Both the position numbers and the translations under genes were made by a program. A stretch of 64,000 nucleotides of DNA from Macrostomum lignano (taxonomy: Eukaryota), in the NCBI GenBank assembly GCA_002269645.1, contig NIVC01000599.1, positions 1 through 64,000 of the forward strand, read 5' to 3'. Numbering within the stretch: the first letter of the stretch is position 1; each line of letters opens with the position of its first letter. Below, one piece after another: positions 28,850 through 55,071 of the stretch. The notes below the pieces were generated by a model. That model ran no database searches and had not been told where the DNA came from. It saw nothing but the letters and a program-made list of their open reading frames with translations.

Positions 28850-30240
28850 CAGCGATTCCACTGGGTTCTCAGCCCCGTCCAAGGCCGTCCGGTCTTTTAA
28901 TGACTGAGACCTTGACATTTTGTCGAGGGTGAGAGCCTTAACCACGCGTGAATTAGGCCGGGCGAGTGCCTTCTAACTCCGCGCAGTATTTGCGCCATTT
29001 GTCGACTTGGCTTTCCTGGTTTTACACTTAAAGTCGCGGATCGCGTCTTGATAGGCGGCTTGGTCAGCTGGGTCCTTGCTTTTGCAAGCTTTCCGTAGGA
29101 GGCACTTTGCCTTGCGCCGGAGGGATCCAAGCGCCGGGTGCCACCAGGGGGGCGGATTTTTTGCCTTTGTAGGCTTTAGGAGGACTGGAAGCCTCATGTG
29201 CCTCATGGCACTTCCTGACAGGTGGTTGGAGCGGCGGTAGTCAGCCGATCTGTCTGGCATTTCAGGGTTTCTGCGAAAGCCGTCCAGTCAGTGTTCCGGA
29301 CGTTCCTTTTCCACAGGATGTTGGGTTTGGCAAGAGGATCGAAAACGAACGAAGCGATGGTCAGACAGAGACTCTTCTTCGTCCCACACCTCCCAGTCCT
29401 TGACCAGAGGAGCCAAACCATGGGAGACGAGGGTTATGTCACGGGCCTCCGTCCATCGCCCGTTGTCAAAGGTGGGTGTTCCACCAATTTCGCAAAACTC
29501 AGTGTTGGTGGTGCAGATGTAAGCAAGGAGTTCCTCGCCTCTGCTGTTGGAAGTATTACTGCCCCAGTGGGTGTGGTGAGCGTTGACGTCGCCCGCCACC
29601 AGCAGCTCGAACCTACGGTTAGAGCAGTAGTCCACGAGGGAGATGAGGTTGGGTGGAACCGCGGGGCCATCGCCAGGGAAATAAATCGAGGCGATGATGA
29701 CCGTGCGGTTGGTGATTATGTGGTTGGGGGGGGGGGACTGAATGACACAGAGGTCTCTGTCAGAGAGGTCCTGTCTGTGCCAAGCTTTGAGATGGGTAGA
29801 CACGAACATGGCTGCTCTGGGGTTTTGGGGTGTCCTGAAAACAGTCAAAACCAGCAGGAATATTCGGAATCTTACCTTTCTTCGTCCAGGGCTCCTGGAG
29901 TAGGATAATGCCCGGTTTCACGAAGGTTGCCACCTGCATCAGGTTGGTCGAGGCCGCGATGCAGTGGTGTAGGTTTAGCTGCAGGATGTCTACTCCGGGG
30001 ATTCCACGGGTCCGCGCAGCTTCCTGTGCAGCGAGTTGTGCAGGAGAGCTGTCTCTTCTACCTCGCCGATGGCTCCAGGCTCCAGTTCCATGGGCTCCTC
30101 CAGGATGGTCTCCATGGTCGAGGGCGGGGCCGCCACCTGGGCGGCATTCTCGCTCTCGGCCCAGTTTTCCGGGGGGCGCAGTGGTGACACTGGGCTGGGG
30201 GTTGCTGCGGTTGTTGGCCTTGGTGGTGTCCAGCAGCTGC
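28850..30240 (-). mobile_element. R1/LOA-like non-LTR retrotransposon fragment: ORF1 tail + AP endonuclease of ORF2, truncated before RT
   Basis: ILQLNLHHC, ILLQEPW, IASIYFP, LVAGDVNAHHTHWGS, RGEELL, TPTF, SLSDHRFVRF, PPWWHPAL; frameshifted. Confidence 0.82.
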
Positions 30241-33900: not shown

Positions 33901-34279
33901 GATACTATAAAGTGCACCAAGGCTGATATATGCAAATAAAAAACATGATTGTGGGAGTGTACATTTCTTAGTCAAATCCTGAACAATGCAGCTATTTTAT
34001 GTCCAAGAAACAAGCTGTTGAAACCCGCGGATTTTGAACCCGGGGAATTCCAATCCCCGGAACTACTTTTGCATGTATTCTGAAATCTAAGGCCATACCC
34101 CATACACAAACAAATTAATAGTTAGTAGGATAGAGGTAGACATAAATTGGAGCACATTTGTGTAAAATTAGGTTTTGAGGCAAACGTTGATATTGTTTGC
34201 TGGAATGCTAGGGTACTCCACAGAATGCCAGGCAATGTCTGTCTGACTCTAAAACATGTATTGGCAAACTCTGGCCTCT

Positions 34280-34953
34280 CCCTGACTCTCCCTATGTCCC
34301 TTGGATCCTTTAAAATTTCTATCGTCTCTTCTGTTTCCTTTCTTCTTTCATCCCTCGTCTCTCGTCTCTCCTCTCTCTTCTCTCCTCTCTTCTTTCGTAT
34401 CTTCCCTCATCTCTCTTCTCTTTCATCTCTCTTATCTCATCTCTTCCCTATTCTTTTCTCTCTCCTCTCCTCTCTCCTTTCTACTTTTCGTTTTCTCTCT
34501 GCTCTCCTCTCTCCTCTCTACTCTTTCGTTTTCTCTCTCCTCTCCTCTCTCTTCTCTCCCCATCTTCTCTCGTCTCTTCCTTCTCCTCTCTATTCTTTTC
34601 TCTCTTCTCTTAACTCTCTCCTCTACTCTCTCATCTCTCCTCTCTACTCTTTCCTCTCTCTCTCCTCTCTCCCCTCTTCTCTCGTCTCTTCCCTCACCTC
34701 TTTCCTCTCTCTCTTTCCTCTCAGCTCTTTTCTTGTTTTATCTCTTCTCTCTCCCCTCGTCGCTCGTCTCTTCCCTCACCTCTTTCCTCTCTCTCTTTCC
34801 TCTCATCTCTTTTCTTGTTTTATCTCTTCTCTCTCCCCTCGTCGCTCGTCTCTTCCCTCACCTCTCTTCTCTCTCGTCCGCTCTTTCATCTCTCCTTTCT
34901 CTTCTTTTATATTTTCTCTCTTATCTCTTCTCGTTTATCTCTGCTCTGCGCTT

Positions 34954-35017
<64 letters not shown>

Positions 35018-35790
35018 CCCATCTCTCTTCTCCTCTCTACTCTCTCCCCTCTTCATTCTCCTGTTTCCTCTTCTCTCTCCTCTGTTCTCTCCACTCTCCC
35101 ATCTCTCGTCTGTTCATCTGCTCTCTCATCTGTCATCTTTACTCTCTTATACGTTCTCTCACTTATCTCCTCTGTACTCTTCTCTTTCACCTCTTCTCAC
35201 TCCTCTCTTTCCTTACTCCTCTCTTCTTTTCTTTTCCCTTTCTATACTCTCTCTCCTCTATTATCTTCTCTCGTCTCTCTGCACTCTCCTCTCACATTTT
35301 TCATCTCTCATCTCTTCTTTGATCTGTCTCATCTCTACAATCTCATCTCTTTCCTCTCTCCTCCTCTTCCTTTTACTCTCTCATCTCTCCTTTCTCCCCT
35401 CTTCTTACACCCCTCTCTTATCTCTATCTCTTCTCTTCTCACCCCTTCTCTCCCCCTCTTATCTCCTCTCTTTTCTATCCTTTCTACTCTCTCCTCTCTA
35501 ATCTCTCATCTCCTCTTGACCCTCTGTCATCTTCTTTCTGCTCTCTCATCTCTCATCTCTTCTCACTCTTCTCTACTCTCCTCTCATCGATCCTCTGTCT
35601 CATCTCTCCCCTCTTCTCACATTTACTCTTTCCTCTCCCTCCTTTCTCCCCTCCTCTCGCTTCTTCCTCCCTTCTTCTCTGCTCTCTCCTCACCACTTGT
35701 CTCTCCTCTTATCTTCCATGTTTTCTCTTATCCCCCTCTCGCCTCTCCTCTCTTCTAATAGTCTATTCCTTCTCCTTTCCACTCTCATCT
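34280..35790. repeat. 1.5-kb polypyrimidine (CT-rich) low-complexity tract including a pure (CT)n run at ~34958-35012
   Basis: Almost exclusively C/T on the + strand. Confidence 0.92.
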
Positions 35791-36479
35791 GGCCCGCACA
35801 TAAGCTGGATTCTTTATCTGGCTTTTAAAGTAAAAGTCTGCCCATTCCTGCTTGGAAAGCCAGTTTGTGGGACGTAGTAGTACTCTCATGGCTGTTCTCA
35901 TGCTTTGATCACGTCATTTTTCTTGCCAATTTGCAGCCCTGAAAGGAATTTGTGTATTTTCAGCTCCACTGCAGTCTGCATCAGTCTAACAACCAAGGAA
36001 AAAAGCATTTCTTAGGACATTTAAAATTTAAAGTACTTTTAAGAGAAACCTAAAATTTCCATGGTGTGACTAATTTAGTAGGGTTGCATTGCATCGCATC
36101 GCCTTTTCATAAATCTTTCGCTTTCACAAACCATGCTGGATAGTGGATTCCCTCGATTAGCCAATTGCCAATTGCCATCCACTGTTAAACTGCTGCAGAG
36201 TTTGCCAATACAGAGGGGAGGGCAGTGGTTAGAATTTCTCACTAAACTGTCATGGCTAAACGTAGCCTCTCCACTCTCGGGGTGCAGAGAAGGCTATAAA
36301 TAAAGTTATTCCAAAACACTGTACATTTGCTATGTACATTCAGTCCTATCGCCTGACCCTTCGTCTGGCTCTGGGGGAATGAGTGAGTGAGTGGCACAAA
36401 CAACAGAAAAAGCAGACAAACTTCACATGCTTACAGTTTCTTTTTCGGTTGAGTTAAAGAGTTGAAACTTTACATTTAG

Positions 36480-37832: not shown

Positions 37833-38939
37833 GTAGGATAGCCAGGCCTAGTGTTACAACAAAAAAGTTGATTTAATAGGCTACAATAGCATAGTCTGGA
37901 TCATGCTAAATACAAAAACCCCTACCTAAACAAAAACTAAATAATTATAGGCCTAAATGCATGCCAAAAAGATTTGAGTACATACCAAAACTCTCAAATC
38001 TAGGCCAGCTTTATGATAAAAAATGATGTTTTTGTGTGATAATAAATGATCATTTTTGTGTTGCATAAAAGACCCTTTTTGGCCAATACTTTGGTTGATT
38101 TTTTTTCATTTATAAATAGGCCTACTAATTGCAATATAAAATTTATATATACAAAAATTGTTTAAATGCTTTAATTAGGCCTATAAATTAAAAAAACAGT
38201 AAGCATGAAGTTTATGCTTATAGATGAACTTTTCTTTATTTTTTAACTTTAATACCAACTTTTTTGCATGATTTTAGAAAATTGCACTCTAGTCTAGGTA
38301 TGTATACACACAAATTTTAGGAGTAATTCATGCCAACTTTGCATGCCTAACTTTAGGGATGCAAGGCCAATATATACCTAATTTTTGGCATATATTATAT
38401 GATCTATAGTGTGATGTATAACTAGAAAAAATGATTAAACTTGGATAATAGGCAGTTGCACCTTGATCTCTTTAGGTAGACTTTAAAAAATCTAGCTAGG
38501 CCTAGGCCCTACCACAATCTTATTCCTTATATATATAGTATGAAATAGGTCCTTATCTAGTATTTAAGTCTTTAACTTAAAAGCTTCTTTGCATTTAAAG
38601 TAAAATCTTCTTAACATTAGTCTTCTCTAGTTATAAAGTAGGCCCTAGGCTAGGTATGAAAAATATCTATAACTATTGACTAAATTCATATTCTGTCTAA
38701 CTTCCCATAGCTATATTTATAGCTATAGTAAAAGATGCCACTTTTGATATGAACATTTTATTAAAAGGACTAAATAAATAGCAATTATATATATAATGTT
38801 ATATAAGATGTACAAGATCACTAATTTGCTAACCTTTTTTATAGTCAGGGAGAGATAAGTAAATATCAAAAATGACATGTAGAAAAGTAATTCTATGGCT
38901 TTTTGTCCTATTTCAATTATTGCAACTAAGGGGGCCATA

Positions 38940-39130
38940 GGCCATAGCCCAGTGGTAGCGCAGCTGCTCTGGTGTGCTAGCAACCCAGGCTCAATTCCAA
39001 GTGCAGTCACATTAATTTGGGGCTGAATTGGAATCTCGGCTTGGCTCTGCTCATGCAATTAATGGCCTTGAGAGCCAACCCCCCAAGGTGCAGTGAAGTG
39101 TACATGCCTAGGCCCTAATAATAATAATAA
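38940..39130 (+). mobile_element. tRNA-derived SINE-like element with (TAA)n tail
   Basis: A-box-like TAGCCCAGTGG, degenerate B-box GGCTCAATTCC, 3' TAATAATAATAATAAG. Confidence 0.5.
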
Positions 39131-39594
39131 GAATGATAATGATAAAGTTAGGGCTGCTGTACACTTCTGTATGAGTGTGTGCCTGCATATGTATCCGCGT
39201 GCTTGTATGCCTACTCAGGGGAGTTGGCAGAATGGGCAGTAATGCCTCTCGCCAATTGTGTAGAGATGTTCCGAAATTTCGATTTCGATTTCGATTTTCC
39301 GAAATTCGGATTTTTTTATGTGAGGGTTCCCCGACAGATATTCGCGACAGATATTTTCTCCTTCAATCGGATAATTCAAACAAAAAATGAATTTATGTTT
39401 CGGGATGCATTACTTACTCTGATGCCGTATTCAGCTTTAAAATTTTGTAGACAAAAATTTTATGTCTTAAAGAAAAAAATATTAGTACGAATACAAAGTG
39501 TGTCAAAACGAATTTTATCACACATTCCTTACAAAAAAATTCTCACGCCAAAGAACTTATGAAGTAACGGTAGCAATGAATTTTTTGTCAGTTT

Positions 39595-40421
39595 CTGACG
39601 CATGTCTCAACTTTGCAATGACACCTTAGACACATGTCCTACTTTTGTATTTCCTGGGATATCTGCTTCCAAAGTGTGCTTTCCGTGAGTCATTCATCAT
39701 CCGTACCAAGACCAACCAAAACTTTGACTTATCGCTCCGTCTCTATGCTTCAATCATTTGCTCTGAAACTTCTACCACTTCTTGACGCATGTCTCAGCTT
39801 TGCAGTGACACCTTAGACACATGTCCTACTTTTGTATTTCCCGGGATATCTGCTTCCAAAGTGTGCTTTCCGTGAGTCATTCATCATCCGTACCAAGACC
39901 AACCAAAACTTTGACTTATCGCTCCGTCTCTATGCTTCAATCATTTGCTCTGAAACTTCTACCACTTCTTGACGCATGTCTCAGCTTTGCAGTGACACCT
40001 TAGACACATGTCCTACTTTTGTATTTCCCGGGATATCTGCTTCCAAACTGTGCTTTCCGTGAGTCATTCATCATCCGTACCAAGACCAACCAAAACTTTG
40101 ACTTATCGCTCCGTCTCTATGCTTCAATCATTTGCTCTGAAACTTCTACCACTTCTTGACGCATGTCTCAGCTTTGCAGTGACACCTTAGACACATGTCC
40201 TACTTTTGTATTTCCCGGGATATCTGCTTCCAAAGTGTGCTTTCCGTGAGTCATTCATCATCCGTACCAAGACCAACCAAAACTTTGACTTATCGCTCCG
40301 TCTCTATGCTTCAATCATTTGCTCTGAAACTTCTACCACTTCTTGACGCATGTCTCAGCTTTGCAGTGACACCTTAGACACATGTCTGACTTTTGTATTT
40401 CCCGGGATATCTGCTTCCAAA
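39595..40421 (+). repeat. 187-bp tandem repeat, ~4.4 copies (left arm)
   Basis: Units start at 39634, 39821, 40008, 40195 and 40382 (partial). Confidence 0.97.
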
Positions 40422-40573
40422 TTGTGCGTTCCGTGGGTTATGTCTATATATCTCTCGCTGCGTCTTTTGCTCAAGCATACTACGAGTCTACGAGACACGC
40501 GATCAAACACATGATTGGTTTGCGTATTTCTCGAGATATTTTTTGAGCTCTTTGGTTTCAAAATGACACCTTT

Positions 40574-43377
40574 CCCAATCAAAAAGAAGTTGTCTTAAGA
40601 CGTCTTAGAATAGTCTTAAGATGGCTAAAGACACCTCAAGACAATTTCAAGATATCTTCCACTTTGCTTCCACAAGCTATCCTGATTAAGTTGTCTTGAA
40701 GATGACTTGAAATTGACTTTTATGAGATGTCTTGTTGAAGACATCTTTAAGACATCACCTTAAAGACTAAAAATTTACATAAACAACTGTTTCTACTGTA
40801 AGTAGGAAGTTTCAGATACAAATTTATCTAGATCGTTAAAATCAATAAAAAATAAAACAAGCAACTATTGTGACATTTATCAAAAAATTTTGTTGTATTG
40901 TAGTCTGTGGAAGGTGTGCCTATTATTAAAAATCCTTTACGCTTTTGGAGTGCAATTATATGCAATTTTTTGTATTGAGTCGTTGCAAACTCTGAGACAA
41001 AGTTTAACTACAACAGTTTTGATTGGAGTAAATATATTTACAAAATTCTAAACAGCAAAGCATTAAAAAAGACTAAGTTGCAATATATATCGGTGATGCT
41101 TTTGTTAAAAACAGCTAAAATCAATATGGCGGAACGACATTTTTAAAAAGGACTAAAAGACAACCTTGTTCACCGTGAAGGCCGCCTAATTCTCGAACAC
41201 TTGCTTCTATCTTTTGTAATAAGTTTCAATTTTTCATTGGCTGCTATAGCCTATATAGATTTCTGGTGTAAGCCCTACCCTAGATTTATCTTTACTTAAT
41301 GCGATAATGTATTACTATTCGTAATTCGTGATGATACATCTACTATCCTCAAATTAAACCTTCCTAGTAGTATTTTTTACTAATTCTTCCTTGGATAGCT
41401 TCTAGGATTGTATTTCATATTCTAGTGCCAGGTGCCAGCAACAAACCCAGATTGGCCAGAAATGTTTTTATGCAATAGGCAATAGGGATGCTATGTAACA
41501 TCCTGACTTAAAAATTACAATTTTAAATTGGACCTTGGATGCAATGTTTTTTTAGTTAGGCCTACTGCATATCTATTGCTATGCCTAGCACTAGTAAGCA
41601 CTAGTTAACTAATGCATAGTCATGTGTACATTTTAAGTTAGGCCTTAAAAGATTCCGGCATTAACTAGAGGCCCATGTACTAGGCCTAAAACTAAAAATA
41701 TATGTTTTATTTACTTCTAGCTTTTTAAAGTCAAAGTTTTATAGTTGTTGAATTGGCTTATTAGGCTATTTTGTTCTGTTGTAGGCCTCTTAGCCTTAGA
41801 TAGGCCCTAGGCCTAGCTTCTTCCTTAAGCCTAAATAGTTTTTGTTTTGATTTTTATGTCAAAAGTAATAAATAATTTCCATGAGCCTAGGGTATAGCTA
41901 GGTTTATTTTTTATATGTAGAGTGTATATATGCACTTTTAATTTAAAATTGCACCCAGAAATTGAAAATTGCAATTTAAGGACAGTCTTATAACCTGATT
42001 TTCTGTTAAACTTGAAGCCACATTTGCATTGCCCTAAATGGCTAAAATAAGAAAAATAAAAAATTGCACTTTGAGCCTTAAAATTACACTATAAAAATGA
42101 GTATAGAGTGCACTTTTGTACCTTGTCTCTGGCAAAAAAAGAAAACCTTGGCCTATAGGCCTTTATATATTGCTTCCTCTTTGCCTTTATTATTGGCTAA
42201 TGGCATATATATGATGTTTTCAATATATCAATATTTTGAATATTAGGCCTAGTCATTAGTGCATTTTTCTTGGCTAGGCCAATGAAAATTTAAATAAAAA
42301 ATAGATATAGCCTTATAATTTATTATTAGGCCTATATCACATTCAAAAATTGGATTAGGCCTAATAGAGAATAAATAGAGTTGGTATGCCTAGAAGTTTT
42401 ATATAAAATTGATATTCTAATCTTTTTATTTTGCTTTGAGATTAGGCCCTAAGCTTTAGCCTATGTATTTAAGCCTAAGGCAAAGTTATTGTATAATACA
42501 CTTGTGTGAATATATAGTAGGGGCCTAGGCAATTTATTTATTAGATTTTTAATGTATATTAGTATAATAATCTATTATTTATTATTTTTTGTTTTTTTAC
42601 TTATGAATTTCAAATTATTTCAGCCTAACAACCTATAAACTATAACCTTTATTAAACTTATCCTTTTCAGCCTTATCAAAACATGCTATCCATCATAGTG
42701 GAAGCTAACCTGGATCTTGAATCTTCCTGGATTGAGCCAATTCTAAACTAGTAGTTGGCTAGCAAAGGATCAATTTACAGCAAGTTTTCCACCAAGCAAT
42801 GAGCAACTTGGTCATTATTGCATTAACCAAGTATTTCTATGCAATGACTGGGTATGATGCATTATAAAATTATACACTTGCACTTGAGTATTTTTGCATT
42901 TTTATTTAGTGTATTTTAACTTGTTTTTGATTCACCATTTTATTGCTTCTGTGACTTTTAAACTGTGCCTTTTATAAAATGAAAATATAAATCATAAATT
43001 ACATTGAACCATGTTTAGAAGCCTACTAAATAGCTTCTCTTTCATATCAATATTGCCTGAAACGAAACAAAAGAGTGCTGTAATATTTTTAGTCATTTTT
43101 CTTTTAAACAACTGTGATTGCAATGGCAACAGCATTTCTTAAATGATCTTGGGCAAGATGTCTTCTGCAAGTCATCTGGAAGATGTCTTTAAGTAGATTT
43201 TAAGATGTCTTGAAGATGTCTGAAGACGTCTTCAAGTTATCTCTAAGTTGTCTACAAGTGTTGCAAGGAGCCAATTTTTAGACCGAATTAAGTCAATTGT
43301 AAGATGTCTTGAAGACATCTTTCTGTCTTATGCAAGACATCTTTAAGACATAATTAAGCCAACTTTTTTTGATCGGG
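40574..43377. mobile_element. 2.8-kb non-autonomous CCC-ended element with 2-bp TT TSD (CMC/EnSpm-like)
   Basis: CCCAATCAAAAAGAAGTT / AACTTTTTTTGATCGGG (16/18 complementary); TT both sides; dense subterminal GTCTT/AAGAC motifs at both ends; AT-rich interior with no long ORF. Confidence 0.75.
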
Positions 43378-44216
43378 TTAGATAGAGTCAGCTAGCTTTT
43401 GTGTTATTCCTGAACAATGTCTGTTTCTTGGCGAATCCGGTGGCGAAAAGTATATTGTCGACATAAGTTTTTTGTAAAGTATTACAAGCAGTTTCTCGAA
43501 ACAAAAAACAATAACTCATTAAGAACAACTGTATTTGTGTAAATGTCTTGTACTATGTATAGATTATTGCAGTTACTATCGTAGTTGAGGGGAAAGAACA
43601 AATGGTCGTATGAATAAAGTGAGTAGTTGCTCAAACTCGGCGAGATTCTCAAATCAGTATGAATAAAATGAGTGCGTCCTCCTGAGCAAGTGCTCAAAAT
43701 CAATTTCCCAAGAGTTACATGTAGTGCTCTCCCCGTGAGCAAATGCTCGGTGACTGAGTAGAGACTCGCTTCAGTATGAATAAACTCTGGTCATAAACGA
43801 TTGCAATTTGTCTTGAGATCTTGCTCAGCAAAAGTTGAGTCTCCTCTGTAGTAGACTCACTGGTTGAGCAGCATCCAGCCATGTCCCTAAGCGGCAAATA
43901 GCGTCTATGTCCCTACGCTATTGAACTCAAATTTATAGGCAACCCATAGGCTTTTTCGCACAAGTAACGAAAACCAGCGGTCGCACTTTACCTGTTACCG
44001 CCATACAAAAGTGGCCTATCTAGGGAATATAAGATCTATGATTCATATGAACATTGAGCAACTGCTCCAGATCAGAGCAGTTGCTCGAGTTCGAGCTTTT
44101 GCTCAATCTCAGAGTTTGAGGTGAAACTCGCCAGTTATTGCTCACTGTAGTCATACGGCCAAAATAAAGCTAGGAAATTTTAGGAAATGTAACTTTCATA
44201 TAAACAAACATAACCG

Positions 44217-47187
44217 TCAGCTGTCTAAATTAATGCATGTGACACACACCTTGTTGTTCTGGTCTTGTTGTCGAGTCCAGCAAGATTTGTGAAACCAGAA
44301 GAGGCACGATGGGCACTCGATCTGCAGATTTTATGCGGTATAGCTATGCCTCATACGCTCGTATATACTTACATGAATTACCTTAGTGCGTCCAAAAAGT
44401 TCTTAGACACCCCTCCTATCTCTGCACATGTTCAATCGATTTTTATAAAAATTGACAAAAACATGTACCTATATGTAATGAATTCAGTGCTAAAGTTTCA
44501 GCTTAATCGGGTTGACATAGCAAAAGAAATTGATCGTTTCTAAGGTACACTAAGGTGTTAATTTTCAACGTAACTTACCCACTCAATTGTACTCGTAGAA
44601 CGATTTCGACCCCGCGGCCGGGGTTCTTCTAAATGGCAACCGTGGCATGTGTTTTGCTCTGATTTTTCGTCAAAATTGGTTATTGCTGTCTTTATAATGC
44701 CTCGAGCAACGGACAGCTTTGGCTGCACATTAGGTATAATAGTGCACCTACCAAGCAATAAATTTCTTCCAAAGAGCGAAACAAAAACGCCGCAGGAGTC
44801 GGAGTCTATTTGCTGCGTGCAAATCCGATGGGAAACTGCGAAGCATTCCCTCTGGGAGTTTTCAATGAGTGGGCCAAGACATTCGTCGACATCTGACAAT
44901 AGGAGTAGCGCGCTGAAACCGTAAAACGAATTTTATAGATGCAGAGATTTGCATAAGGTGTAATAAAATAATTTTAGGCTTGGTACATTCCTTACTTCCA
45001 CTTTCTTGCTATTTCCTCCACTTCATTCTTTCTTCTTCCGCCAGTGCGCCTCATCGAGTCCAGTGAGTAGATTTTTTTCTCATCAAGAAGGATTGCTACG
45101 AGCCAAAAATGGCTCGGCGACAACATTGGAATCAGAATTTTTGTTATTTTCTAATTGTTGGATAGTGGTAAGAACAAAATGGATTGTATCGTTTCTTTAA
45201 TAATTAATATACGAGTAATTTGTATTTGCAATTGTACTTACGCTTCTTCCTGTCGCGTAGTTCTGCAAGGCTTCTTTTGTCGGAAGCAGAAGATTGTTTG
45301 GGTTGTCAATGACTGCATAAAAGTCGCTTTGCTTCATGACAACAGCGTCTTCGATTCCGCTAGCCACCGCAGCCAAATAGCCGTATACAACCTAATATGT
45401 TACAGCATACGTGTATGGTTACAAGAATGTGAAACGTACTTAGGGAATTTACTCAGATTACACAAAATTACGCTCACGGAGTAATCCAACCAACTAGATC
45501 CATCAAGAGTTGCTAGTTGATCATAAGTTACTATTGTGCCGTGAATATCTCGGAGAGTGACAAAATTAGGCTCCGGCTGTGTCGACTGCTGATTCTGAAA
45601 CTGTTGCTGCTGCCGTTCTGTCTGCTGCTGTTGCTGTTGTGGGGGCTGGTCATGTTGCTGTTTCTGAGACTGTTGCTGCTGCCGTTCTGTCTGCTGCTGT
45701 TGCTGTTGTGGGGGCTGGTCATGTTGCTGATTCTGAGACTGTTGCTGCTGCCGTTCTGTCTGCTGCTGTTGCTGTTGTGGGGGCTGGTCATGTTGCTGAT
45801 TCTGAGAGTGATAAATTATTTTTACAAAGTTCCTCGTTGTATACTTCGCTCGTCTTCTATCCCACTGCTCCTGCGCTCCTTCTGGAGTCATGGAATCGTG
45901 CTTTCTCTTTCGAGGGCAGAAAAATGGTCGAGACTTCGTTTTGTGGGCGATGTTTGCTTCTTTGATTCTGTCATGAATGAATTCTGCGTTGGATTTACAA
46001 AACATTGCGGGCGAAAGAGGCAGTTCCAGAGTTGATTTTATTTGTTTGATTATGGAAGCTAGGTAATTTAATTGCTCAGCAGAGTACATTACAACTCGAA
46101 GTGGCTCGCAGCATCTTTCTCTCACAATTCCAGGCAAATATGGGTGTGAGTAATCACGTTTCAGTCCTTCCTGCATGCGAATCAATTCTATAAAAACATC
46201 TTTGTGCAGTTTCTCCTTCCTCCGAGAGCTTTTCAATACCCTTTTAAGGACATTTCTTGATTTGCAGGAGTCAAAATTCATCGCGAGAACATGCATCATA
46301 TGTTTCTTTTCAAGCATGAGTTTCCGATGGGCTTCTGTAACACCTTTGCAAGAGTCGATTTTCCTTTTTAACAAAATTTCTTCTGCTTGAGTCGTTCTCC
46401 TAAACGTTGGCGATTCAGCTTCTTTGTGGTTATAAGTTCCCTCTGCATAAACCTTCCAAACCCATCTTTCTGAACACGTGGGTTGTTCTTTCATAATAAA
46501 AGTAAATTTGCGAAGGCACCCTTTAATTTTACACGCAGCCTTAACGGTCCAAAAATTGCTTTCCGCCTTCCGAGATCGAAGAGATTTAACGTGACAGTAA
46601 CCTCTCATGCGTAGACAGCAAGTCGAGATTCTACGCAGTGCTTTACAGAGGGCTTCGTTTAGGTTGGATTTCGAAAAGGAAAATTTACGCGTATTTTCTA
46701 GCTGCTTGAGGTCAACGGCTTTAATTTCTGCGGGTTCAAAATATATTTCTTGGGTATCTGTTTCTTGATCCAAAACTAAAAGGCTCTCTTTAGGAGGTGG
46801 TGTCTGGTGTCTCGACTCGTGCATATTATCTTCTTCTTCAATGCAAACTACCGTCCCAGAGCCTCCAGTTGAGGATGATGAGTTTTCAGTATCTGATGGA
46901 GCCCCTGACGACTGTAAGGGTACATGTACATGTACTGGTGTTGGAGGTGAACTGGGTGGACTGGGTGCTTGATTGGAATCCCGTCGAATCCAATTCCACA
47001 TAAGCAATCGATTGCGAACTGTGTTGCGTAGATTGAGTCTCGCTGACAATAATAAATAAATTGCTCCTGGCGAACGATAGTCTGTTGGAATGCCATGTTT
47101 TTTAACAGCCTCCAAAACGGCGGAACTAATCTGGAAAGTAACCAACAAACGCACAGAATAAAATGCGCGTTTCTTTAAGTCTACCAT
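44217..47187 (-). CDS. Transposon-encoded 817-aa protein: transposase-like N-terminal region + Q-rich repeat + Ulp1/SENP (C48) protease + PHD finger; exons 47187-45478, 45391-45242, 45150-44996, 44912-44579, 44321-44217
   Basis: All four introns are GT-AG and phases are consistent (2454 nt total). QLATLDGSSWLDYS|VVYGYL, PSHFWLV, IYSLDSM, QQIDSDSCGVFV (His/Asp/Gln/Cys). CHGC...EW|IECPSC..WFHKSC...CVTC is C4HC3. Confidence 0.82.
45590..45805 (-). repeat. Three 69-bp coding repeats (SQNQQHDQPPQQQQQQTERQQQQ)
   Basis: In frame within exon 1 of the transposon gene. Confidence 0.9.
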
Positions 47188-47817
47188 CGATCCTACATGT
47201 GGTAGACGTAGAGGCTACCCATACGGCAGTCAGCAACACGATATGTTATTTAACTTACCTCTTTCTTCGATGGGTAACAAGAACACGCAATAAACAATGT
47301 AAAAAGCAAGACTATAAGCTTCATACTGAAGTAGAGAATATATACTATTTTCCAATAATTAGTTTTTATAAATTCACCACATTTACGCAGACATTGACAA
47401 ACCAAAAAGGACAGAATTTTTTTGACAAGCGCGTGAACGATTCTGAAATTGAAAAACTTGACATTAACTTTGCATCCATATCCAAAGATCCACAAAATAC
47501 TGCTGCTGAATTTGCTATAAGAGGTGTGTACAGTTTCTTGCATTCCTAGAGTAATTTGCTTAAACGAGGACAGTTGGAATGTACAGCAACTTCTGTGTAC
47601 AGTTGTCAGTTGCAGAGAAACAAACAGCATTGATTATAGGAATAGCGCAAATTAGATGAGTGATGACTCAACATACTTAAGGTACCGATCAATGATAGCT
47701 AAAAAGTGCATTAGGAATTGACAAAACTTGCCAGTTGCAAAAATAAAGCATTAAAGACGTAGTATGAAGTCAAAGCCAGCAGACAATTGTTCTGACTGAA
47801 ACTGCAAAGTGCATAGA

Positions 47818-49772
47818 AAGCACACTTTGGAAGCAGATATCCCGGGAAATGCAAAAGTCAGACATGTGTCTAAGGTGTCACTGCAAAGCTGAGACATGCG
47901 TCAAGAAGTGGTAGAAGTTTCAGAGCAAATGATTGAAGCATAGAGACGGAGCAATAAGTCAAAGTTTTGGTTGGTCTTGGTACGGATGATGAATGACTCA
48001 CGGAAAGCACACTTTGGAAGCAGATATCCCGGGAAATACAAAAGTCAGACATGTGTCTAAGGTGTCACTGCAAAGCTGAGACATGCGTCAAGAAGTGGTA
48101 GAAGTTTCAGAGCAAATGATTGAAGCATAGAGACGGAGCAATAAGTCAAAGTTTTGGTTGGTCTTGGTACGGATGATGAATGACTCACGGAAAGCACACT
48201 TTGGAAGCAGATATCCCGGGAAATACAAAAGTCAGACATGTGTCTAAGGTGTCACTGCAAAGCTGAGACATGCGTCAAGAAGTGGTAGAAGTTTCAGAGC
48301 AAATGATTGAAGCATAGAGACGGAGCGATAAGTCAAAGTTTTGGTTGGTCTTGGTACGGATGATGAATGACTCACGGAAAGCACACTTTGGAAGCAGATA
48401 TCCCGGGAAATACAAAAGTCAGACATGTGTCTAAGGTGTCACTGCAAAGCTGAGACATGCGTCAAGAAGTGGTAGAAGTTTCAGAGCAAATGATTGAAGC
48501 ATAGAGACGGAGCGATAAGTCAAAGTTTTGGTTGGTCTTGGTACGAATGATGAATGACTCACGGAAAGCACACTTTGGAAGCAGATATCCCGGGAAATAC
48601 AAAAGTAGGACATGTGTCTAAGGTGTCACTGCAAAGCTGAGACATGCGTCAAGAAGTGGTAGAAGTTTCAGAGCAAATGATTGAAGCATAGAGACGGAGC
48701 GATAAGTCAAAGTTTTGGTTGGTCTTGGTACGGATGATGAATGACTCACGGAAAGCACACTTTGGAAGCAGATATCCCGGGAAATACAAAAGTCAGACAT
48801 GTGTCTAAGGTGTCACTGCAAAGCTGAGACATGCGTCAAGAAGTGGTAGAAGTTTCAGAGCAAATGATTGAAGCATAGAGACGGAGCGATAAGTCAAAGT
48901 TTTGGTTGGTCTTGGTACGGATGATGAATGACTCACGGAAAGCACACTTTGGAAGCAGATATCCCGGGAAATACAAAAGTCAGACATGTGTCTAAGGTGT
49001 CACTGCAAAGCTGAGACATGCGTCAAGAAGTGGTAGAAGTTTCAGAGCAAATGATTGAAGCATAGAGACGGAGCAATAAGTCAAAGTTTTGGTTGGTCTT
49101 GGTACGGATGATGAATGACTCACGGAAAGCACACTTTGGAAGCAGATATCCCGGGAAATACAAAAGTCAGACATGTGTCTAAGGTGTCACTGCAAAGCTG
49201 AGACATGCGTCAAGAAGTGGTAGAAGTTTCAGAGCAAATGATTGAAGCATAGAGACGGAGCGATAAGTCAAAGTTTTGGTTGGTCTTGGTACGAATGATG
49301 AATGACTCACGGAAAGCACACTTTGGAAGCAGATATCCCGGGAAATACAAAAGTAGGACATGTGTCTAAGGTGTCACTGCAAAGCTGAGACATGCGTCAA
49401 GAAGTGGTAGAAGTTTCAGAGCAAATGATTGAAGCATAGAGACGGAGCGATAAGTCAAAGTTTTGGTTGGTCTTGGTACGGATGATGAATGACTCACGGA
49501 AAGCACACTTTGGAAGCAGATATCCCGGGAAATACAAAAGTAGGACATGTGTCTAAGGTGTCACTGCAAAGCTGAGACATGCGTCAAGAAGTGGTAGAAG
49601 TTTCAGAGCAAATGATTGAAGCATAGAGACGGAGCGATAAGTCAAAGTTTTGGTTGGTCTTGGTACGGATGATGAATGACTCACGGAAAGCACACTTTGG
49701 AAGCAGATATCCCAGGAAATACAAAAGTAGGACATGTGTCTAAGGTGTCATTGCAAAGTTGAGACATGCGTC
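47818..49772 (-). repeat. 187-bp tandem repeat, ~10.4 copies, inverted relative to 39595-40421 (right arm)
   Basis: Ten identical-length 60-aa pseudo-ORFs at exact 187-bp steps from 47870 to 49735. Confidence 0.97.
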
Positions 49773-51020
49773 AGAAACTGACAAAAAATTCATTGCTACC
49801 GTTACTTCATAAGTTCTTTGGCGTGAGAATTTTTTTGTAAGGAATGTGTGATAAAATTCGTTTTGACACACTTTGTATTCGTACTAATATTTTTTTCTTT
49901 AAGACATAAAATTTTTGTCTACAAAATTTTAAAGCTGAATACGGCGTCAGAGTAAGTAATGCATCCCGAAACATAAATTCATTTTTTGTTTGAATTATCC
50001 GTTTGAAGGAGAAAATATCTGTCGCGAATATCTGTCGGGGAACCCTCACATATTTTTTTAGAGCAAATTTCGATTTCGAAAAAATTTCGGAAGTCAAAAT
50101 TTCGGAAGTGCCTACTTCCGAAATTTTTATCTAATTTTAGTTTTTTAGAACTTCGTTACTGTCTTTTATCGGTGATATTATACAGTTTTTACATGTAAAA
50201 CTTTTTGAATTTGTTAAAACTGTTCCATGCATGTAGGACATGTAACATGGTAGTTTGTACATGTGGAACTGTAAATTTTCGTAAATTTTGTTGCACTTTA
50301 AAGCTGCAAAAGCGTCTGCTGATATATTGCATATTTTTCGCATTTTACAGTATATATATGTACATTTACCGTACATGTACATGCATTATCGTTTACACGA
50401 TCTCAGTTATTGCTAGTCATGCAGTACTGATACATGTACATTTTAACTGTACATTTTATACATGTACAACTCAGTATACACCCTATACCCTACCGCCTAG
50501 ACGGATAAAGGCAGAGAAATTTGTTTTGTCTAGCAGGGAAAAGGCGCGCTTTGCTGCCGTGCTTTAATACCGTCTAGTAATATATGCAATATACGCGCCT
50601 TAGTCTTTCTTTTAAAGGCACTAGTTCAAATAAATTACTTAACATATTTACAGTATATGTAGTTTTCGCGTCGAAAAAAAAAATTTGCATTTAAAAGTGG
50701 CAATGAGGGATTCTACTTATTTAGTGGCCGAAAATAAACGAACTTCTGCTAAACATACATGTATTTTGTTTTGCATGAGCAGTAAATCGAAAGTAGAAAA
50801 GTGAGTGTCGGTTGTACTAAACTTTGTTTTTCTGAATTACGATTTCGGAAAATTTCGATTTCGATTTCGATTTCGACAGAAAATTCGCTTTCGGAACATC
50901 TCTACGACTACAATTGTGTGCCTATGTTGCTTAAAGTGTACCAGGGTGCATACAACCCCCCTGCCTCTAATAAAAAATCATTGCAACTATCATACATGTG
51001 CAACCCCCCTGATTTACACT

Positions 51021-51590
51021 GGCTATGCAACTTACTTTTTGACCAAAAATGCCACTTACCTGTGAAAGAAACCCTAAAGCAGAATTAATGCAATTTTGGG
51101 TAAATGGCAAGAGTAACTATAACTGTCTTATAAGGGCTAAATGCCTCGTCATCTAATTAGTACTACATCTATTCTTTGGGTTTGGGCATTTTTGCAACTT
51201 ACCCCTGGTCCTCCACAATTTACAGTGGCCAGATTGGCCAGGCTGGCCAGCAGTTGTGCATGTATGGCAACTATTACATTTGAAAAAATAGATAGTTTAG
51301 CTATATGATTGAATGGATTGTGCTGTCATATTATTGGATTAACACCATACATGCGCAATAGTTGGCCGAGTCGGCCGATCTGGCCGACTGATTTGGCGGC
51401 CAACCAAGGAAGTCGCAAAAATGCCCACCCAAAAAAATAACCAAGTAGTAGTACTAAGTAGCTGACGAGGCATTTTGGCCTTATAAGACAGTCATAGTTA
51501 CTCCTGCCGATTACCCAAAGTTGCATTAATTTTGCTTTAAGTTTTTTTACATATAAGTCGCATTTTTTGTTAAAACTAAGTCGCACGGCC
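51021..51590. mobile_element. ~570-bp MITE with ~130-bp imperfect TIRs
   Basis: GGCTATGCAACTTA...GTCTTATAAGGGCTAAATGCCTCGTCA mirrored by TGACGAGGCATTTTGGCCTTATAAGAC...TAAGTCGCACGGCC. Confidence 0.65.
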
Positions 51591-52922: not shown

Positions 52923-55071
52923 ATGACGGTTGGCTCCGATTCTGTAGTCATGCTGGCCTCCATGTGCGCCTTCTTCGCCCTTGGCTGGGTGTTCTTTCTC
53001 AAGCATTTGTTCCGCGACTACGAGGTCCGGCATTGGATTGTGCTGGTGTCCTTCTCTGTCACTTTCGCCTTGTCCTGCGGCATGTTCGAATTGATCATCT
53101 TCGAGATTGTCGGCCTGCTCGACCCGCTGTCCCGCCGGCTTTGGTGGCGGCTGTGCATTTTTGCTATGCTGATCTTGGTCATGGTGGTGCTGCCCTACTA
53201 CACCTGCTACTTTGCCATCTCATCGGCCAGCTTCCTGCCGCGCCGCCGGTCTGTCCGCTCCGCCCTGGCGCTGGCCTGCTGGCTCGGCTTCGTCTGGCTA
53301 TTCTGGCGTCTCGGCGACCCCTTCCCGATCCTGTCGCCCAACCATGGCATCTTCTCTCTGGAGCAGTGCATCGGCCGGGTCGGCGTCATCGGCGTGACCA
53401 TCATGGCGCTGCTGTCCGGCTTCGGCGCCGTCAACTACCCCTACAGCTGCATGCACGTCTTCGTCCGGCCCGTCACCCAGTCCGCCGTGCTGGGCATCGA
53501 GCGCCGCCTGTTGCAGACGCTGGACTTGGTGGCAGCCAAACGGCGTCGGGCCGCCCTGCTTCGTCGGGACGAGGCGCAGAGTCGGCAGGCATCCGGCTGG
53601 AGCCTGCCCTGGACGGCTGCCGCGGCCGCGGCCAGACGGTCTGGCCCAACAGCGGCCAGCGTCGAGTCCGAGGCGGCCAATCACGAGGAGCTGGGCAGGC
53701 AGCTGTTCTTGGAGTTGCACGAGTTGAAAACCGCGCAGGAGAGGGCAGCGCATAGCCGGACTCTGCAGGTACGGACTGAGGGGAAGGTGAAGACTAAAGA
53801 TGGCCAATGAGACTAAGACGGTAGCTCGCAGCAGGAAGGCTAGAGAGGATAGAGTGAGAGGTAACAGGATAGAGTAAAGTGAGAAGTAGACAGGGTGAGA
53901 TTGTTGAGTTGGAGCTAAATGATAGAGTAGAGTGAGGGTAACAGAAAGTTAGAAGGTAAAGCAGGCTTCAACTCAACAAGTGAGAGGCAGATAGGAAAGT
54001 GTAGAGTGAGAGGTAGACAGGAGAGTGTAGAGTGAGAGGTAGACAGGAGAGTAGAATAAGAGGTAGAAAGTAAATTGTAGAGTAAGCGGTAAAAAGTAGA
54101 GTGTAGAGGTAGAGGTAAACAGGAGAGTGTAGAGTGGGTGGTAGGCAGGTCAGTGTAGAGTGAGAGGTAGGCAGGTCAGTGTAGAGTTAGAGGTAGGCAG
54201 GTCAGTGTAGAGTGAGAGGTAGGCAGGTCAGTGTAGAGTTAAAGAGTAGATCCTGATTGATTCCGACAAAACGCAGGGCCGGTACTTCAACCTACTCGGC
54301 TGGGTGTTCTGCGCCTACTGCCTGTGGAAGCTGTGCTCCTGCACCATCAACATCGTGTTCAACAGGGTTGGCAAAGTGGACCCGGTGACCAGGGCGCTGC
54401 ACATTTGTGTCCAGCTGCTCGGGTTTCGTCTGGATGTACAGTTTTGGTCTCAGCAGGTGAGGGAGGCTGGGCGTCATCGTTTTTTATTTACCGTTGTTTG
54501 AAGCTTAATGGTAATTTAGGGTCGACTCTAACTTCTTAGCTGTGTGTCACATTCACTGAACTCCCATATTTCATTCACTGAAATCCAATATTTCATTCAC
54601 TGAAATCCCATATTTCATTCACTTCAATCCCATATTTCATTCACGGAACTCCCCATATTTCATTCACTGCAATCCCATATTTCATTCACTGAAATCCCAA
54701 ATTCCCATATTCAGGTGAGCTTCTGGCTCGTGGGCATCATGGCGGTGACCTCAATCCGGGGCCTGCTGCTGACTCTAACCAAGTTCTTCTTCGCCTTGGC
54801 GTCAACCCATAGCTCGAACATCATGGTGCTGCTGCTGGCCCAGGTCATGGGCATGTACTTTCTCAGCTCCGTTCTGCTGATGCGAATGAACATGCCCGCC
54901 GAGTACCGGCACATCATCACCCAGGTGCTTGGCGACCTGCAGTTTCACTTCTATCACCGCTGGTTCGATGTCATCTTCCTGCTGAGCGCCTCCTCGTCTA
55001 TCGCCTTCATCTGGGTGGCGCACAAGCAGACAGTTGGCAAATCAGAGCACGAATCCTTGCTGCTGAGGTGA
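52923..55071 (+). CDS. GPR89: Golgi pH regulator GPR89/GPHR; exons 52923-53768, 54277-54456, 54715-55071; 460 aa
   Basis: [101 protein letters not shown]. Two phase-0 GT-AG introns. Confidence 0.95.
54555..54710. repeat. ~22-bp tandem repeat (TTTCATTCACTGAAATCCCATA) in GPR89 intron 2
   Basis: About six degenerate copies. Confidence 0.8.

What the first reader, a model, noticed from the sequence alone, without database searches (positions are those of the whole stretch)
39318..50051. Foldback transposon whose inverted arms are built from nucleosome-sized tandem repeats
Seen: two near-identical inverted arms, each a ~280-bp unique terminus plus a 187-bp tandem array, enclose ~7.4 kb with one gene. 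ATTTTTTT is duplicated at both ends. Established: modular, tandem-repeat-built arms around an internal ORF is the foldback architecture (Drosophila FB-NOF), and 8-10-bp TSDs fit Mutator-type elements. Inference: this is a young, possibly undescribed foldback/MULE family. The arms differ by only a few SNPs and the outermost repeat unit carries the same private variants on both sides.
Basis: partly seen in the sequence, partly recalled or inferred. Interest (0 to 1): 0.85.

Follow-up and report, generated by a model that had tools for sequence, protein, structure and literature searches.

The report
Deleted foldback Mutator-like transposon, flatworm
This is a real, recently inserted 10.7-kb foldback DNA transposon in the flatworm Macrostomum lignano; its arms are built from 187-bp tandem repeats, and its single gene is a transposase that has lost its catalytic core, which makes it a new member of a known kind, not a new kind.

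Summary
The element spans 39318-50051. It ends in identical inverted termini (ATGTGAGGGTTCCCC...) and is flanked by an 8-bp duplication, ATTTTTTT. Each arm is a 278-bp unique end plus a 187-bp tandem array. The outermost units share three private variants.

The host is Macrostomum lignano. A roughly 93%-identical second locus lacks the whole region.

The single gene has 5 exons and encodes 817 aa. It is colinear with 1,000-1,350-aa uncharacterised animal proteins that carry a conserved D, D, CxxH, E core. An AlphaFold model of one of these proteins best matches the IS256-family transposase ISCth4, the bacterial relative of Mutator, by my recollection. The window's copy keeps the N-terminal zinc-finger region, a Ulp1-type protease and a PHD-like finger. 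It has lost about 380 aa holding all the catalytic residues, so it must be mobilised in trans.

Three independent relatives also carry 174-209-bp arrays beside the transposase gene. One of them has arrays in both inverted arms.

The closest known elements are Tetris (Drosophila virilis), Tm1 (Meloidogyne) and FB-NOF. Repbase and Dfam, and copy number in the genome, could not be checked.

The parts
39310..39317 (.). Left copy of the 8-bp target-site duplication ATTTTTTT
39318..39595 (+). Left unique terminal domain (278 bp). It starts ATGTGAGGGTTCCCCGACAGATATTCGCGACAGATATT and holds one ATGTCTTAAAG motif at 39462.
39596..40441 (+). Left 187-bp tandem array: 4 full units plus a 98-bp partial inner unit
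40574..43396 (.). AT-rich 2.8-kb inner segment. It is bounded by an imperfect inverted repeat (CCCAATCAAAAAGAAGTTGTCTTAAGAC and its partner) and by clusters of about 11-bp AAGATGTCTT motifs at 40586-40756 and 43155-43365. It is either a nested non-autonomous element or an inner binding-site domain.
44217..47187 (-). Gene of 5 exons: 45478-47187, 45242-45391, 44996-45150, 44579-44912, 44217-44321. The CDS is 2,454 nt and encodes 817 aa, with four GT..AG introns. It is a transposase derivative that lacks the DDE core.
46036..46797 (-). Region matched by the zinc-finger and pre-catalytic region of the relatives' transposases. All matches stop at 46036-46069, just before the first catalytic Asp.
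45587..45807 (-). 69-bp coding minisatellite, 3.2 copies, encoding a Gln-rich linker at about the site of the deletion
44579..45560 (-). Ulp1-type (Peptidase_C48) protease domain spread over exons 1-4. His, Asp, Gln and Cys align with SENP5 and Ulp1.
44217..44650 (-). PHD-like C4HC3 finger (CHGC...CPSC..H..C...CVTC) across exons 4-5. It falls below Pfam thresholds here but is significant at the same position in relatives.
47816..49773 (-). Right 187-bp tandem array: 10 full units plus an 88-bp partial inner unit, inverted relative to the left array
49774..50051 (-). Right unique terminal domain, the inverted copy of the left one with 2 mismatches
50052..50059 (.). Right copy of the 8-bp target-site duplication ATTTTTTT

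Best explanation
This is a non-autonomous, internally deleted copy of a cut-and-paste DNA transposon with foldback architecture, in the genome of Macrostomum lignano. It belongs to an unannotated animal lineage of Mutator-like (MULE/IS256-type) transposons.

Autonomous members of that lineage encode one large protein. It consists of an N-terminal head, a zinc-finger DNA-binding region, a DDE core with a CxxH motif, a C-terminal cysteine protease (Ulp1 type or USP type), and a PHD finger.

Shown here:
- The element inserted with an 8-bp staggered cut, giving the TSD ATTTTTTT.
- Each arm is a 278-bp unique end plus a 187-bp array.
- The arrays predate the current copy-number difference, because their outer and inner boundary units match between the arms.
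- The gene keeps the DNA-binding region, the Ulp1 domain and the PHD-like finger. It has lost about 380 aa holding both Asp residues, the CxxH motif and the Glu.

Inferred:
- The copy is mobilised in trans by a full-length relative.
- The deletion arose by abortive gap repair.
- Array length drifts by unequal exchange or slippage, and the arms are kept alike by recency or gene conversion.
- The repeats, and the ATGTCTT-type motifs they share with the termini, act as extra transposase-binding sites.
- The truncated protein could compete for those sites, as a KP-like repressor does.
For: Structure:
- Arms, arrays, termini and TSD are established.

Host and absence elsewhere:
- The Golgi pH regulator exon is 100% identical to M. 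lignano BOX15_Mlig020911g1.
- The second locus, NIVC01000019.1, joins window position 38928 directly to 51289.

Gene model:
- Five exons, 817 aa, canonical splice sites.
- The C-terminus matches Peptidase_C48 at 24.4 bits against a cutoff of 20.7, and SENP5 at E=1e-3 with His, Asp, Gln and Cys aligned.

Relatives:
- An exhaustive HMMER search with aa 150-455 found 66 proteins, the best at 2e-19.
- Their alignment conserves D in 46/49, D in 43/44, C..H in 42/43 and 42/44, and E in 34/35 sequences.
- The AlphaFold model of one relative has pLDDT above 90 over most of residues 180-790.
- Its best Foldseek hits are ISCth4, the IS256-family transposase (E=3e-4, probability 0.99). These rank ahead of Hermes and RAG1.
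- Two of 52 relatives give faint Pfam MULE hits.

The deletion:
- Alignment with P0136 is colinear: window protein 35-86 with P0136 23-75, 187-377 with 250-436, and 552-797 with 966-1188. The core between them is missing.
- tblastn finds no core anywhere in the window.

Family habit:
- L002 and L009 carry a 186-187-bp array of about 15 units, followed by a 354-bp unique end.
- L005 carries a 174-bp array of 9.9 units.
- L011 has inverted arms, 97% identical over 695 bp, holding repeats of about 200 bp around a full 1,251-aa ORF.

Literature:
- Mutator transposases with Ulp1 and PHD are reported in hydra and lancelet (PMC2836005).
- Foldback MULEs with 8-10-bp TSDs are described as Tm1 (PMC3169594).
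- Arms of about 220-bp repeats with 8-9-bp TSDs are described as Tetris (PMC4079207).
Against: - Only one copy was seen. No second insertion, clean empty site or autonomous M. lignano copy could be looked for.
- The second locus lacks a larger 12.4-kb block, not just the element.
- The Mutator assignment rests on relatives only 25-34% identical, a structure prediction with low TM-scores (0.15 and 0.32), and sub-threshold Pfam MULE hits. Hermes (hAT) is the next structural match, and 8 bp is also the classic hAT TSD.
- The WRKY-like fold of the zinc-finger region is not significant.
- No TIRs or TSDs could be defined for most relatives.
- The array units of different lineages share no sequence similarity, so the shared habit could be convergence or chance.
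Confidence: 0.78

Rival explanations
1. The element is a foldback transposon of the hAT or P superfamily (Galileo-like), not of Mutator.
For: An 8-bp TSD is typical of hAT and close to P (my knowledge; PMC12730594 states the 8 bp for hAT). Hermes is the second-best structural match, at E=3e-3. Galileo shows that foldback arms occur in the P superfamily (PMC3573991, PMC4079207).
Against: The IS256-family ISCth4 chains are the top five structural hits, at probability 0.98-0.99. No hAT dimerisation domain, BED, THAP or P-element Pfam domain appears in any of the 52 relatives, and the only transposase families to appear are MULE (2 members) and DDE_Tnp_1_5 (1), all faint. The relatives' motif TN..VENWF...K resembles, from my memory, the MULE catalytic-Glu motif. 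A profile search of the PDB found no hAT or P match.
Confidence: 0.12
2. The structure is a one-off inverted duplication or an assembly artefact around a satellite array, with an unrelated host gene in the middle. On this reading it is not a mobile element.
For: Only one copy was seen. The M. lignano genome is rich in tandem repeats and duplications (PMC5730564). The window is full of minisatellites.
Against: The identical 20-mer termini abut an exact 8-bp direct repeat. The inner and outer array boundaries match between the arms. The enclosed gene is a transposase derivative. Independent relatives have the same layout of gene, array and unique end, one of them with both inverted arms. The region is missing at the second locus.
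Confidence: 0.04
3. The 817-aa gene is a domesticated or functional derivative and not just debris. One possibility is a DNA-binding Ulp1/PHD repressor of the family, like a KP element. On this reading the copy persists because of that function.
For: The 5-exon frame is intact, with canonical introns, although it carries a large in-frame deletion. The Ulp1 catalytic residues are retained. The DNA-binding region is retained.
Against: An intact frame is equally expected for a very young deletion derivative. No orthologue or paralogue was found in protein databases that include M. lignano annotations. No expression data were available.
Confidence: 0.15

Closest known systems
Tetris (and its MITE partner DAIBAM), a foldback transposon of Drosophila virilis and D. 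americana (PMC4079207)
   Same: The arm design is almost the same: an outer unique flanking domain, then a variable number of long tandem repeats (about 220 bp there, 187 bp here), then an inner boundary. TSDs are 8-9 bp. Repeat number differs between copies and alleles. The element is non-autonomous.
   Different: Tetris has no ORF and its transposase is unknown. This element keeps a truncated transposase gene, which ties the architecture to a specific transposase lineage. The host phylum differs (Platyhelminthes). There is no evidence here that the 187-bp unit has spread as satellite DNA.
Tm1, a Mutator/Foldback family of root-knot nematodes (PMC3169594)
   Same: Composite TIRs contain tandem repeats and have unequal numbers of units in the two arms. 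TSDs are 8-10 bp. The transposase is Mutator-type. Many copies are non-autonomous.
   Different: Tm1 repeats are about 14 bp, not 187 bp. Its transposase is 496 aa and of the Phantom subclass, with no Ulp1 or PHD reported. Its termini are asymmetric.
Drosophila FB / FB-NOF (the original Foldback element)
   Same: Long inverted arms made of tandem repeats enclose an optional coding middle region. Arm length varies. (From my knowledge, and from citations in PMC3169594 and PMC4079207.)
   Different: From memory, FB repeats are short (10-31 bp) and the TSD is 9 bp. No relative from Drosophila appeared among the named hits, so homology with the NOF protein was not shown.
Animal and plant MuDR/MULE transposons whose transposase carries a Ulp1 protease with or without PHD (hydra, lancelet, KI-MULEs of plants; PMC2836005)
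   Same: A C-terminal Ulp1 (C48) domain followed by a PHD finger is fused to, or encoded with, a Mutator-type transposase.
   Different: Foldback arms of nucleosome-length repeats are not reported for these elements in the paper read. Direct homology to those Repbase entries could not be tested.
Galileo (P superfamily, Drosophila buzzatii group; PMC3573991)
   Same: It has long, internally repetitive TIRs. The repeats carry extra transposase-binding sites, which serves as a model for what the 187-bp units may do.
   Different: Galileo has a P-type THAP transposase and, from memory, 7-bp TSDs. No THAP or P-type domain was found here.

Membership tests
Foldback-type transposons (structural class) | Long terminal inverted repeats made of several domains, including tandem repeats | tested here: met
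   Each arm is a 278-bp unique end plus a 187-bp array. The arms are 99% complementary.
Foldback-type transposons (structural class) | A variable or unequal number of repeat units in the two arms | tested here: met
   4.5 versus 10.5 units, with matching boundary units.
Foldback-type transposons (structural class) | Target-site duplication showing transposase-mediated insertion | tested here: met
   ATTTTTTT abuts both termini.
Foldback-type transposons (structural class) | Multiple dispersed copies in the genome | not testable with these tools
   No M. lignano genome could be searched. There is only one copy in the window. The exact-protein look-up found nothing.
Mutator / MULE superfamily | DDE transposase with a CxxH motif between the second Asp and the Glu | tested here: not met
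   The core is absent from this copy, because it has been deleted. It is present and conserved in the full-length relatives: D 46/49, D 43/44, C..H 42/43 and 42/44, E 34/35.
Mutator / MULE superfamily | Sequence match to the Pfam MULE domain (PF10551) above threshold | tested here: not met
   Relatives give only faint hits, E=0.03-0.13 in 2 of 52, below the 27.6-bit cutoff.
Mutator / MULE superfamily | Catalytic fold closest to IS256/Mutator-type transposases | tested here: inconclusive
   The model of relative P0127 has ISCth4 (IS256 family) as its top five hits, best E=3e-4 and probability 0.99. TM-scores are low, and Hermes and RAG1 follow closely.
Mutator / MULE superfamily | TSD of 8-10 bp | tested here: met
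   8 bp. The range is taken from PMC3169594.
Mutator / MULE superfamily | N-terminal WRKY-GCM1 or FLYWCH-type zinc-finger DNA-binding domain | tested here: inconclusive
   The model of window aa 150-455 has a four-stranded sheet with conserved Cys and His. WRKY domains are among the top Foldseek hits, but only at E=0.16-0.9.
hAT superfamily | hAT C-terminal dimerisation domain, BED finger and 8-bp TSD | tested here: not met
   The TSD fits, but no hAT or BED Pfam domain is found in the window protein or in the 52 relatives. Hermes is only the second structural match.
Zisupton / KDZ | KDZ-type transposase and 8-bp TSD | tested here: not met
   The 8-bp TSD fits (PMC12730594), but no KDZ family appears in the Pfam scans of the relatives.
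P superfamily (Galileo-like foldback) | THAP DNA-binding domain and P-type transposase | tested here: not met
   No THAP or P-element Pfam hit.
Peptidase C48 (Ulp1/SENP) - C-terminal domain of the gene | Pfam PF02902 above the gathering score, and His-Asp-Cys with the oxyanion Gln | tested here: met
   24.4 bits against a cutoff of 20.7. The alignment to SENP5 (9gnn) at E=1e-3 has H, D, QQ and C aligned.

The most novel reading that the evidence does not exclude
The element and its relatives define an undescribed Mutator-like clade that spans several animal phyla. Known members come from a flatworm, a holothurian, a fish and unnamed marine eukaryotes. The clade's transposase is fused to a deSUMOylase or deubiquitinase and a PHD finger. 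Its terminal arms are habitually built from 170-210-bp, nucleosome-length tandem repeats. On this reading the repeats are a working part of the transposon, either as amplified binding sites or as chromatin phasing, and a recurrent seed of satellite DNA.
Probability: 0.25. Interest if true: 0.7.

Novelty: new member of a known kind. Interest (0 to 1): 0.5.

Why it matters
- It gives M. lignano, a regeneration and transgenesis model with a repeat-rich genome, a candidate recently active cut-and-paste family. An autonomous partner should exist.
- It links a Tetris-like arm design to a specific transposase lineage, through the remnant gene this copy keeps. The autonomous partner of Tetris is still unknown.
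- Four independent lineages of one transposase family carry 174-209-bp arrays next to the gene. This hints that nucleosome-length repeats in transposon arms may be a heritable design and not an accident. That bears on how satellite DNA is born from mobile elements.
- The whole transposase family is currently unannotated. Pfam finds only PHD and protease domains in it. Some members sit in bacterial genome bins (MAGs).

Tried and rejected
- Word-indexed protein searches, with the whole 817-aa protein and with a version lacking the Gln-rich stretch, found nothing. The low-complexity linker probably swamped the first search.
- The exact look-up of the 595-aa ORF found no record.
- Pfam on the whole protein missed the protease. 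It was found only when the C-terminal part was scanned alone.
- Rfam and ARAGORN found nothing in the window.
- A profile search of PDB sequences found nothing relevant.
- Foldseek against viral structures found nothing.
- I suspected Zisupton/KDZ because of the 8-bp TSD and my memory of a protease domain. I dropped the idea because no KDZ Pfam signal appeared, and no paper in the library links Zisupton with Ulp1.
- No TIRs could be found around the relatives' genes in L002, L003 and L005.
- The two ~158-bp repeats in L006 are unrelated to each other.
- The repeat units of the window, L009 and L005 share no similarity above shuffled controls.
- The second locus, L001, is not a clean empty site. 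It lacks 38929-51288, a composite of several insertions.
- A literature search for M. lignano satellites gave nothing usable.
Full report
**1. The observation**

The repeat finder reports inverted arms at 39317-40441 and 48928-50052, 1,125 nt at 99% complementarity. A ladder of register-shifted matches accompanies them, as expected for tandem arrays.

Tandem Repeats Finder gives two 187-bp arrays:
- 39596-40435, 4.5 copies, 98% matches.
- 47816-49773, 10.5 copies, 99% matches.

The 20-mer ATGTGAGGGTTCCCCGACAG occurs only at 39318-39337 (+) and 50032-50051 (-), with 0 expected by chance. ATTTTTTT sits directly outside both termini, at 39310-39317 and 50052-50059. It occurs only 19 times on both strands of the window. 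The element is therefore 39318-50051, 10,734 bp, with an 8-bp target-site duplication.

Dividing the arrays into units from the outside inwards shows:
- The unique ends differ at 2 of 279 positions.
- The outermost units on both sides share three private variants: 15G>A, 23G>A and 60C>T.
- The innermost partial units, 98 bp and 88 bp, both carry 44-45 CT>TG.
- The middle units differ in number and pattern.

The arms were therefore symmetrical at some earlier time and have since changed in copy number. The one correction is that the arms are unequal in length.

**2. Host and local context**

An exon at 52923-53810 encodes the N-terminal part of a Golgi pH regulator. It is 100% identical to Macrostomum lignano BOX15_Mlig020911g1.

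That protein's contig is NIVC01000019.1 of assembly GCA_002269645.1, fetched as L001. It is a second version of this locus at about 93% nucleotide identity. M. lignano is known to carry large duplicated blocks (PMC5730564).

In L001, window position 38928 is joined directly to 51289. The missing 12.4 kb contains the foldback element plus flanking material:
- A SINE-like stretch with an (AAT)n tail at 38929 to about 39150.
- A sequence rich in TTCGAAAT motifs that forms its own inverted repeat, about 39255-39308 against 50838-50915, read directly from the sequence printed.

The element is therefore nested inside other insertions that arose after the two loci diverged. This fits a recent arrival, but it is not a clean empty site.

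**3. The gene**

The minus strand carries a 595-aa ORF. It continues through four GT..AG introns of 86, 91, 83 and 257 bp into four further exons. The CDS is 2,454 nt and encodes 817 aa.

The C-terminal 281 aa match Pfam Peptidase_C48 above the curated cutoff, 24.4 bits against 20.7. They also match human SENP5 at E=1e-3, with the catalytic His, Asp and Cys and the Gln aligned.

A C4HC3 PHD-like finger follows. It is weak in this protein, but relatives have a significant PHD finger at the same position.

A 69-bp minisatellite of 3.2 copies encodes a Gln-rich linker.

**4. Relatives of the N-terminal part**

Word-indexed searches found nothing. An exhaustive HMMER search with aa 150-455 found 66 proteins, the best at 2e-19 and 34% identity. 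Many are 700-1,350 aa long.

All named members are 'uncharacterized'. Their sources are:
- a loach, Triplophysa rosa;
- the sea cucumber Holothuria leucospilota;
- contigs binned as a Sedimenticola MAG;
- unnamed ENA, JGI and Logan contigs.

Pfam recognises only PHD (7 of 52), UCH (3), Peptidase_C48 (1) and a faint MULE signal (2 of 52, E=0.03-0.13).

The alignment shows a classic catalytic signature:

| Motif | Residue conservation |
|---|---|
| LYLDATGS | Asp in 46/49 |
| ETDFSWA | Asp in 43/44 |
| H.C..H | Cys in 42/43, His in 42/44 |
| TN..VENWF...K | Glu in 34/35 |

I predicted the structure of relative P0127 using this alignment. The model is confident, with pLDDT above 90 over most of residues 180-790. 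Its best PDB matches are:
- ISCth4 transposase chains, the top five hits, best E=3e-4 and probability 0.99;
- then Hermes (hAT), E=3e-3;
- then RAG1, E=9e-3.

ISCth4 belongs to the IS256 family, which is the bacterial relative of eukaryotic Mutator elements. That relationship is my own knowledge and was not tested here.

The model of the window's own N-terminal region has a four-stranded sheet with conserved Cys and His. It brings up WRKY domains only at non-significant scores.

Taken together, the family is best read as a deep-branching Mutator-like lineage. A hAT-like placement is not excluded.

**5. The window's copy has lost its catalytic core**

BLASTP against P0136 is the clearest comparison. 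P0136 is 1,212 aa and has the full layout: head, zinc finger, core, Ulp1 and PHD. The alignment gives colinear blocks:

| Window protein | P0136 | E-value |
|---|---|---|
| 35-86 | 23-75 | 0.004 |
| 187-377 | 250-436 | 9e-13 |
| 426-450 | 813-836 | weak |
| 552-797 | 966-1188 | 1e-8 |

About 380 residues of P0136, holding both Asp residues, CxxH and the Glu, have no counterpart. tblastn with all relatives shows that every match stops at window 46036-46069, just before the first Asp. No core fragment exists anywhere in the 64 kb.

The copy is thus an internally deleted, non-autonomous derivative whose reading frame is still open.

**6. Architecture in relatives**

I fetched loci for eight lineages of relatives.

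- L002 and L009 are two copies of one family from two JGI samples, 99% identical. The 1,212-aa ORF is followed 570 bp downstream by a 186-187-bp array of about 15 units, then by a 354-bp unique stretch. After that stretch the two copies diverge (...GCTCGGTGAG|), which marks the terminus.
- L005 has a 174-bp array of 9.9 units, 2.3 kb downstream of a 1,009-aa ORF.
- L011 has a full 1,251-aa ORF flanked by inverted arms, 6736-7430 and 16773-17455. They are 97% identical over 695 bp, and the right arm is cut off by the contig end. Each arm holds 198-209-bp tandem repeats, 2.8 and 4.1 units. This looks like an autonomous foldback element of the same family. Its left arm starts TGTGAAGTTGG, which resembles the window's ATGTGAGGGTT. 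That resemblance is only suggestive.
- L003/L004, L007 and L012 show no such arrays. The repeats in L006 and L008 are weak or unrelated.

Units from different lineages share no sequence similarity.

Counting the window, four of nine independent lineages carry long arrays of nucleosome-like period next to the transposase gene. This is a suggestive family habit, not a proven one.

**7. Short motifs**

AGATGTCTT occurs 8 times in the window, always inside the element. The occurrences form two clusters, 40586-40756 and 43155-43365. The clusters, together with an imperfect inverted repeat, bound a 2.8-kb AT-rich segment at 40574-43396.

The same motif core, ATGTCTTAAAG, occurs once in each unique terminus, at 39462 and 49900. 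CATGTCT occurs twice per 187-bp unit, as the sequence shows directly.

These may be transposase-binding sites. Alternatively, the 2.8-kb segment may be a nested non-autonomous element. I could not decide between the two.

**8. How it most likely works**

Shown:
- insertion with an 8-bp TSD;
- modular inverted arms;
- arrays older than their current copy numbers;
- a gene that keeps the DNA-binding, Ulp1 and PHD parts but not the catalytic core.

Inferred:
- mobilisation in trans by a full-length family member in the same genome;
- origin of the deletion by interrupted gap repair after excision, as in Ac/Ds, P and Mu systems (my knowledge);
- array expansion and contraction by unequal exchange or slippage, as documented for Tetris alleles (PMC4079207);
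- the repeats acting as additional binding sites, as shown for Galileo and proposed for Tetris (PMC4079207);
- possible repressor-like action of the truncated protein (speculative).

The role of the Ulp1 domain is unknown. Involvement in SUMO- or ubiquitin-dependent repair or silencing has been proposed for other transposons (PMC2836005).

**9. Comparison with known elements, and novelty**

The arm design is that of Tetris: a flanking domain plus tandem repeats of about 220 bp, 8-9-bp TSDs, and no ORF (PMC4079207).

The combination of Mutator-type transposase and foldback arms is that of Tm1, which has 14-bp repeats and 8-10-bp TSDs (PMC3169594).

The Ulp1-plus-PHD fusion is reported for Mutator transposases of hydra and lancelet (PMC2836005).

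The finding is therefore a new member of a known kind, in a new phylum. Two features are of some interest:
- The remnant gene links this arm design to a transposase lineage.
- That lineage, unannotated in public resources, may carry nucleosome-length arrays as a habit.

I could not consult Repbase or Dfam, and I could not count copies in the genome.

Noticed in passing
window 38929-51288 versus L001 8680-8682: The ~93%-identical second M. lignano locus (NIVC01000019.1) lacks a 12.4-kb block. The block contains the foldback element plus about 1.6 kb of other inserted sequence, so the region is a nest of insertions that arose after the two loci diverged.
   Followed up: partly
window 38929-39150: A SINE-like insertion. 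It has pol III A-box-like and B-box-like motifs (TAGCCCAGTGGTAGCGC, GGCTCAATTCC) and an (AAT)n-type tail, and it is absent from L001. Neither ARAGORN nor Rfam recognises a tRNA here.
   Followed up: partly
window 39255-39308 and 50838-50915: The foldback element sits inside another repeat, rich in TTCGAAAT/TTCCGAAATT motifs. That repeat forms its own inverted repeat (..GTAGAGATGTTCCGAAATTTCGATTTCGA.. and its complement) about 0.8 kb from the right end. It is probably an older MITE-like host element.
   Followed up: no
window 40574-43396: A 2.8-kb AT-rich segment inside the element. It is bounded by an imperfect inverted repeat and by clusters of the 11-bp motif AAGATGTCTT. The motif is found nowhere else in the window except once in each unique terminus.
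   Followed up: partly
window 11554-16967: A cytochrome P450 gene (Pfam p450, E=1.5e-50). Its intron holds a 3.1-kb minisatellite of 129 copies of a 24-bp unit, at 13299-16395. The same array is shorter in L001.
   Followed up: partly
window 19500-25632: A 5.2-kb array with 21-bp and 103-bp periods (76-78% matches) is followed directly by a 30-bp GC-rich array of 31 copies. Together they create many spurious long ORFs in all frames.
   Followed up: no
window 17462-18247 (-): An intronless 261-aa ORF with a PARP catalytic domain (Pfam PARP, E=9e-17), lying between the P450 gene and the satellite block.
   Followed up: no
window 2293-2820, 5538-6446, 26964-27407, 29288-29848: Fragments of other mobile elements: a mariner-type transposase piece (Transposase_1), two reverse-transcriptase pieces (RVT_1), and an endonuclease-reverse transcriptase domain from a non-LTR retrotransposon.
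   Followed up: partly
L011 6736-7430 and 16773-17455: A relative with a full 1,251-aa transposase ORF. It is flanked by inverted arms, 97% identical, made of 198-209-bp tandem repeats. It is an apparently autonomous foldback element from an unnamed eukaryote (ENA ERZ26222911).
   Followed up: partly
L002 14208-17497, L009 8599-11832, L005 8962-10689: Other relatives carry 186-187-bp arrays (about 15 units) and a 174-bp array (9.9 units) just downstream of the transposase gene. In L002 and L009 a 354-bp unique end follows. The period matches the window's, but the sequence does not.
   Followed up: yes
proteins P0144 and P0167: Two members of this eukaryotic transposase family are deposited as proteins of a 'Sedimenticola sp.' MAG. 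Those contigs are probably host (invertebrate) contamination of a bacterial bin.
   Followed up: no
relatives P0126 and others: Some relatives end in a USP/UCH-type protease signature (Pfam UCH in 3 members) and not in Ulp1. The family appears to have swapped the type of C-terminal cysteine protease.
   Followed up: no
window 34325-35585: A 1.3-kb stretch of degenerate (TC)n / TCTCTTC repeats with extreme strand skew (GC skew -0.65 in 34001-36000).
   Followed up: no
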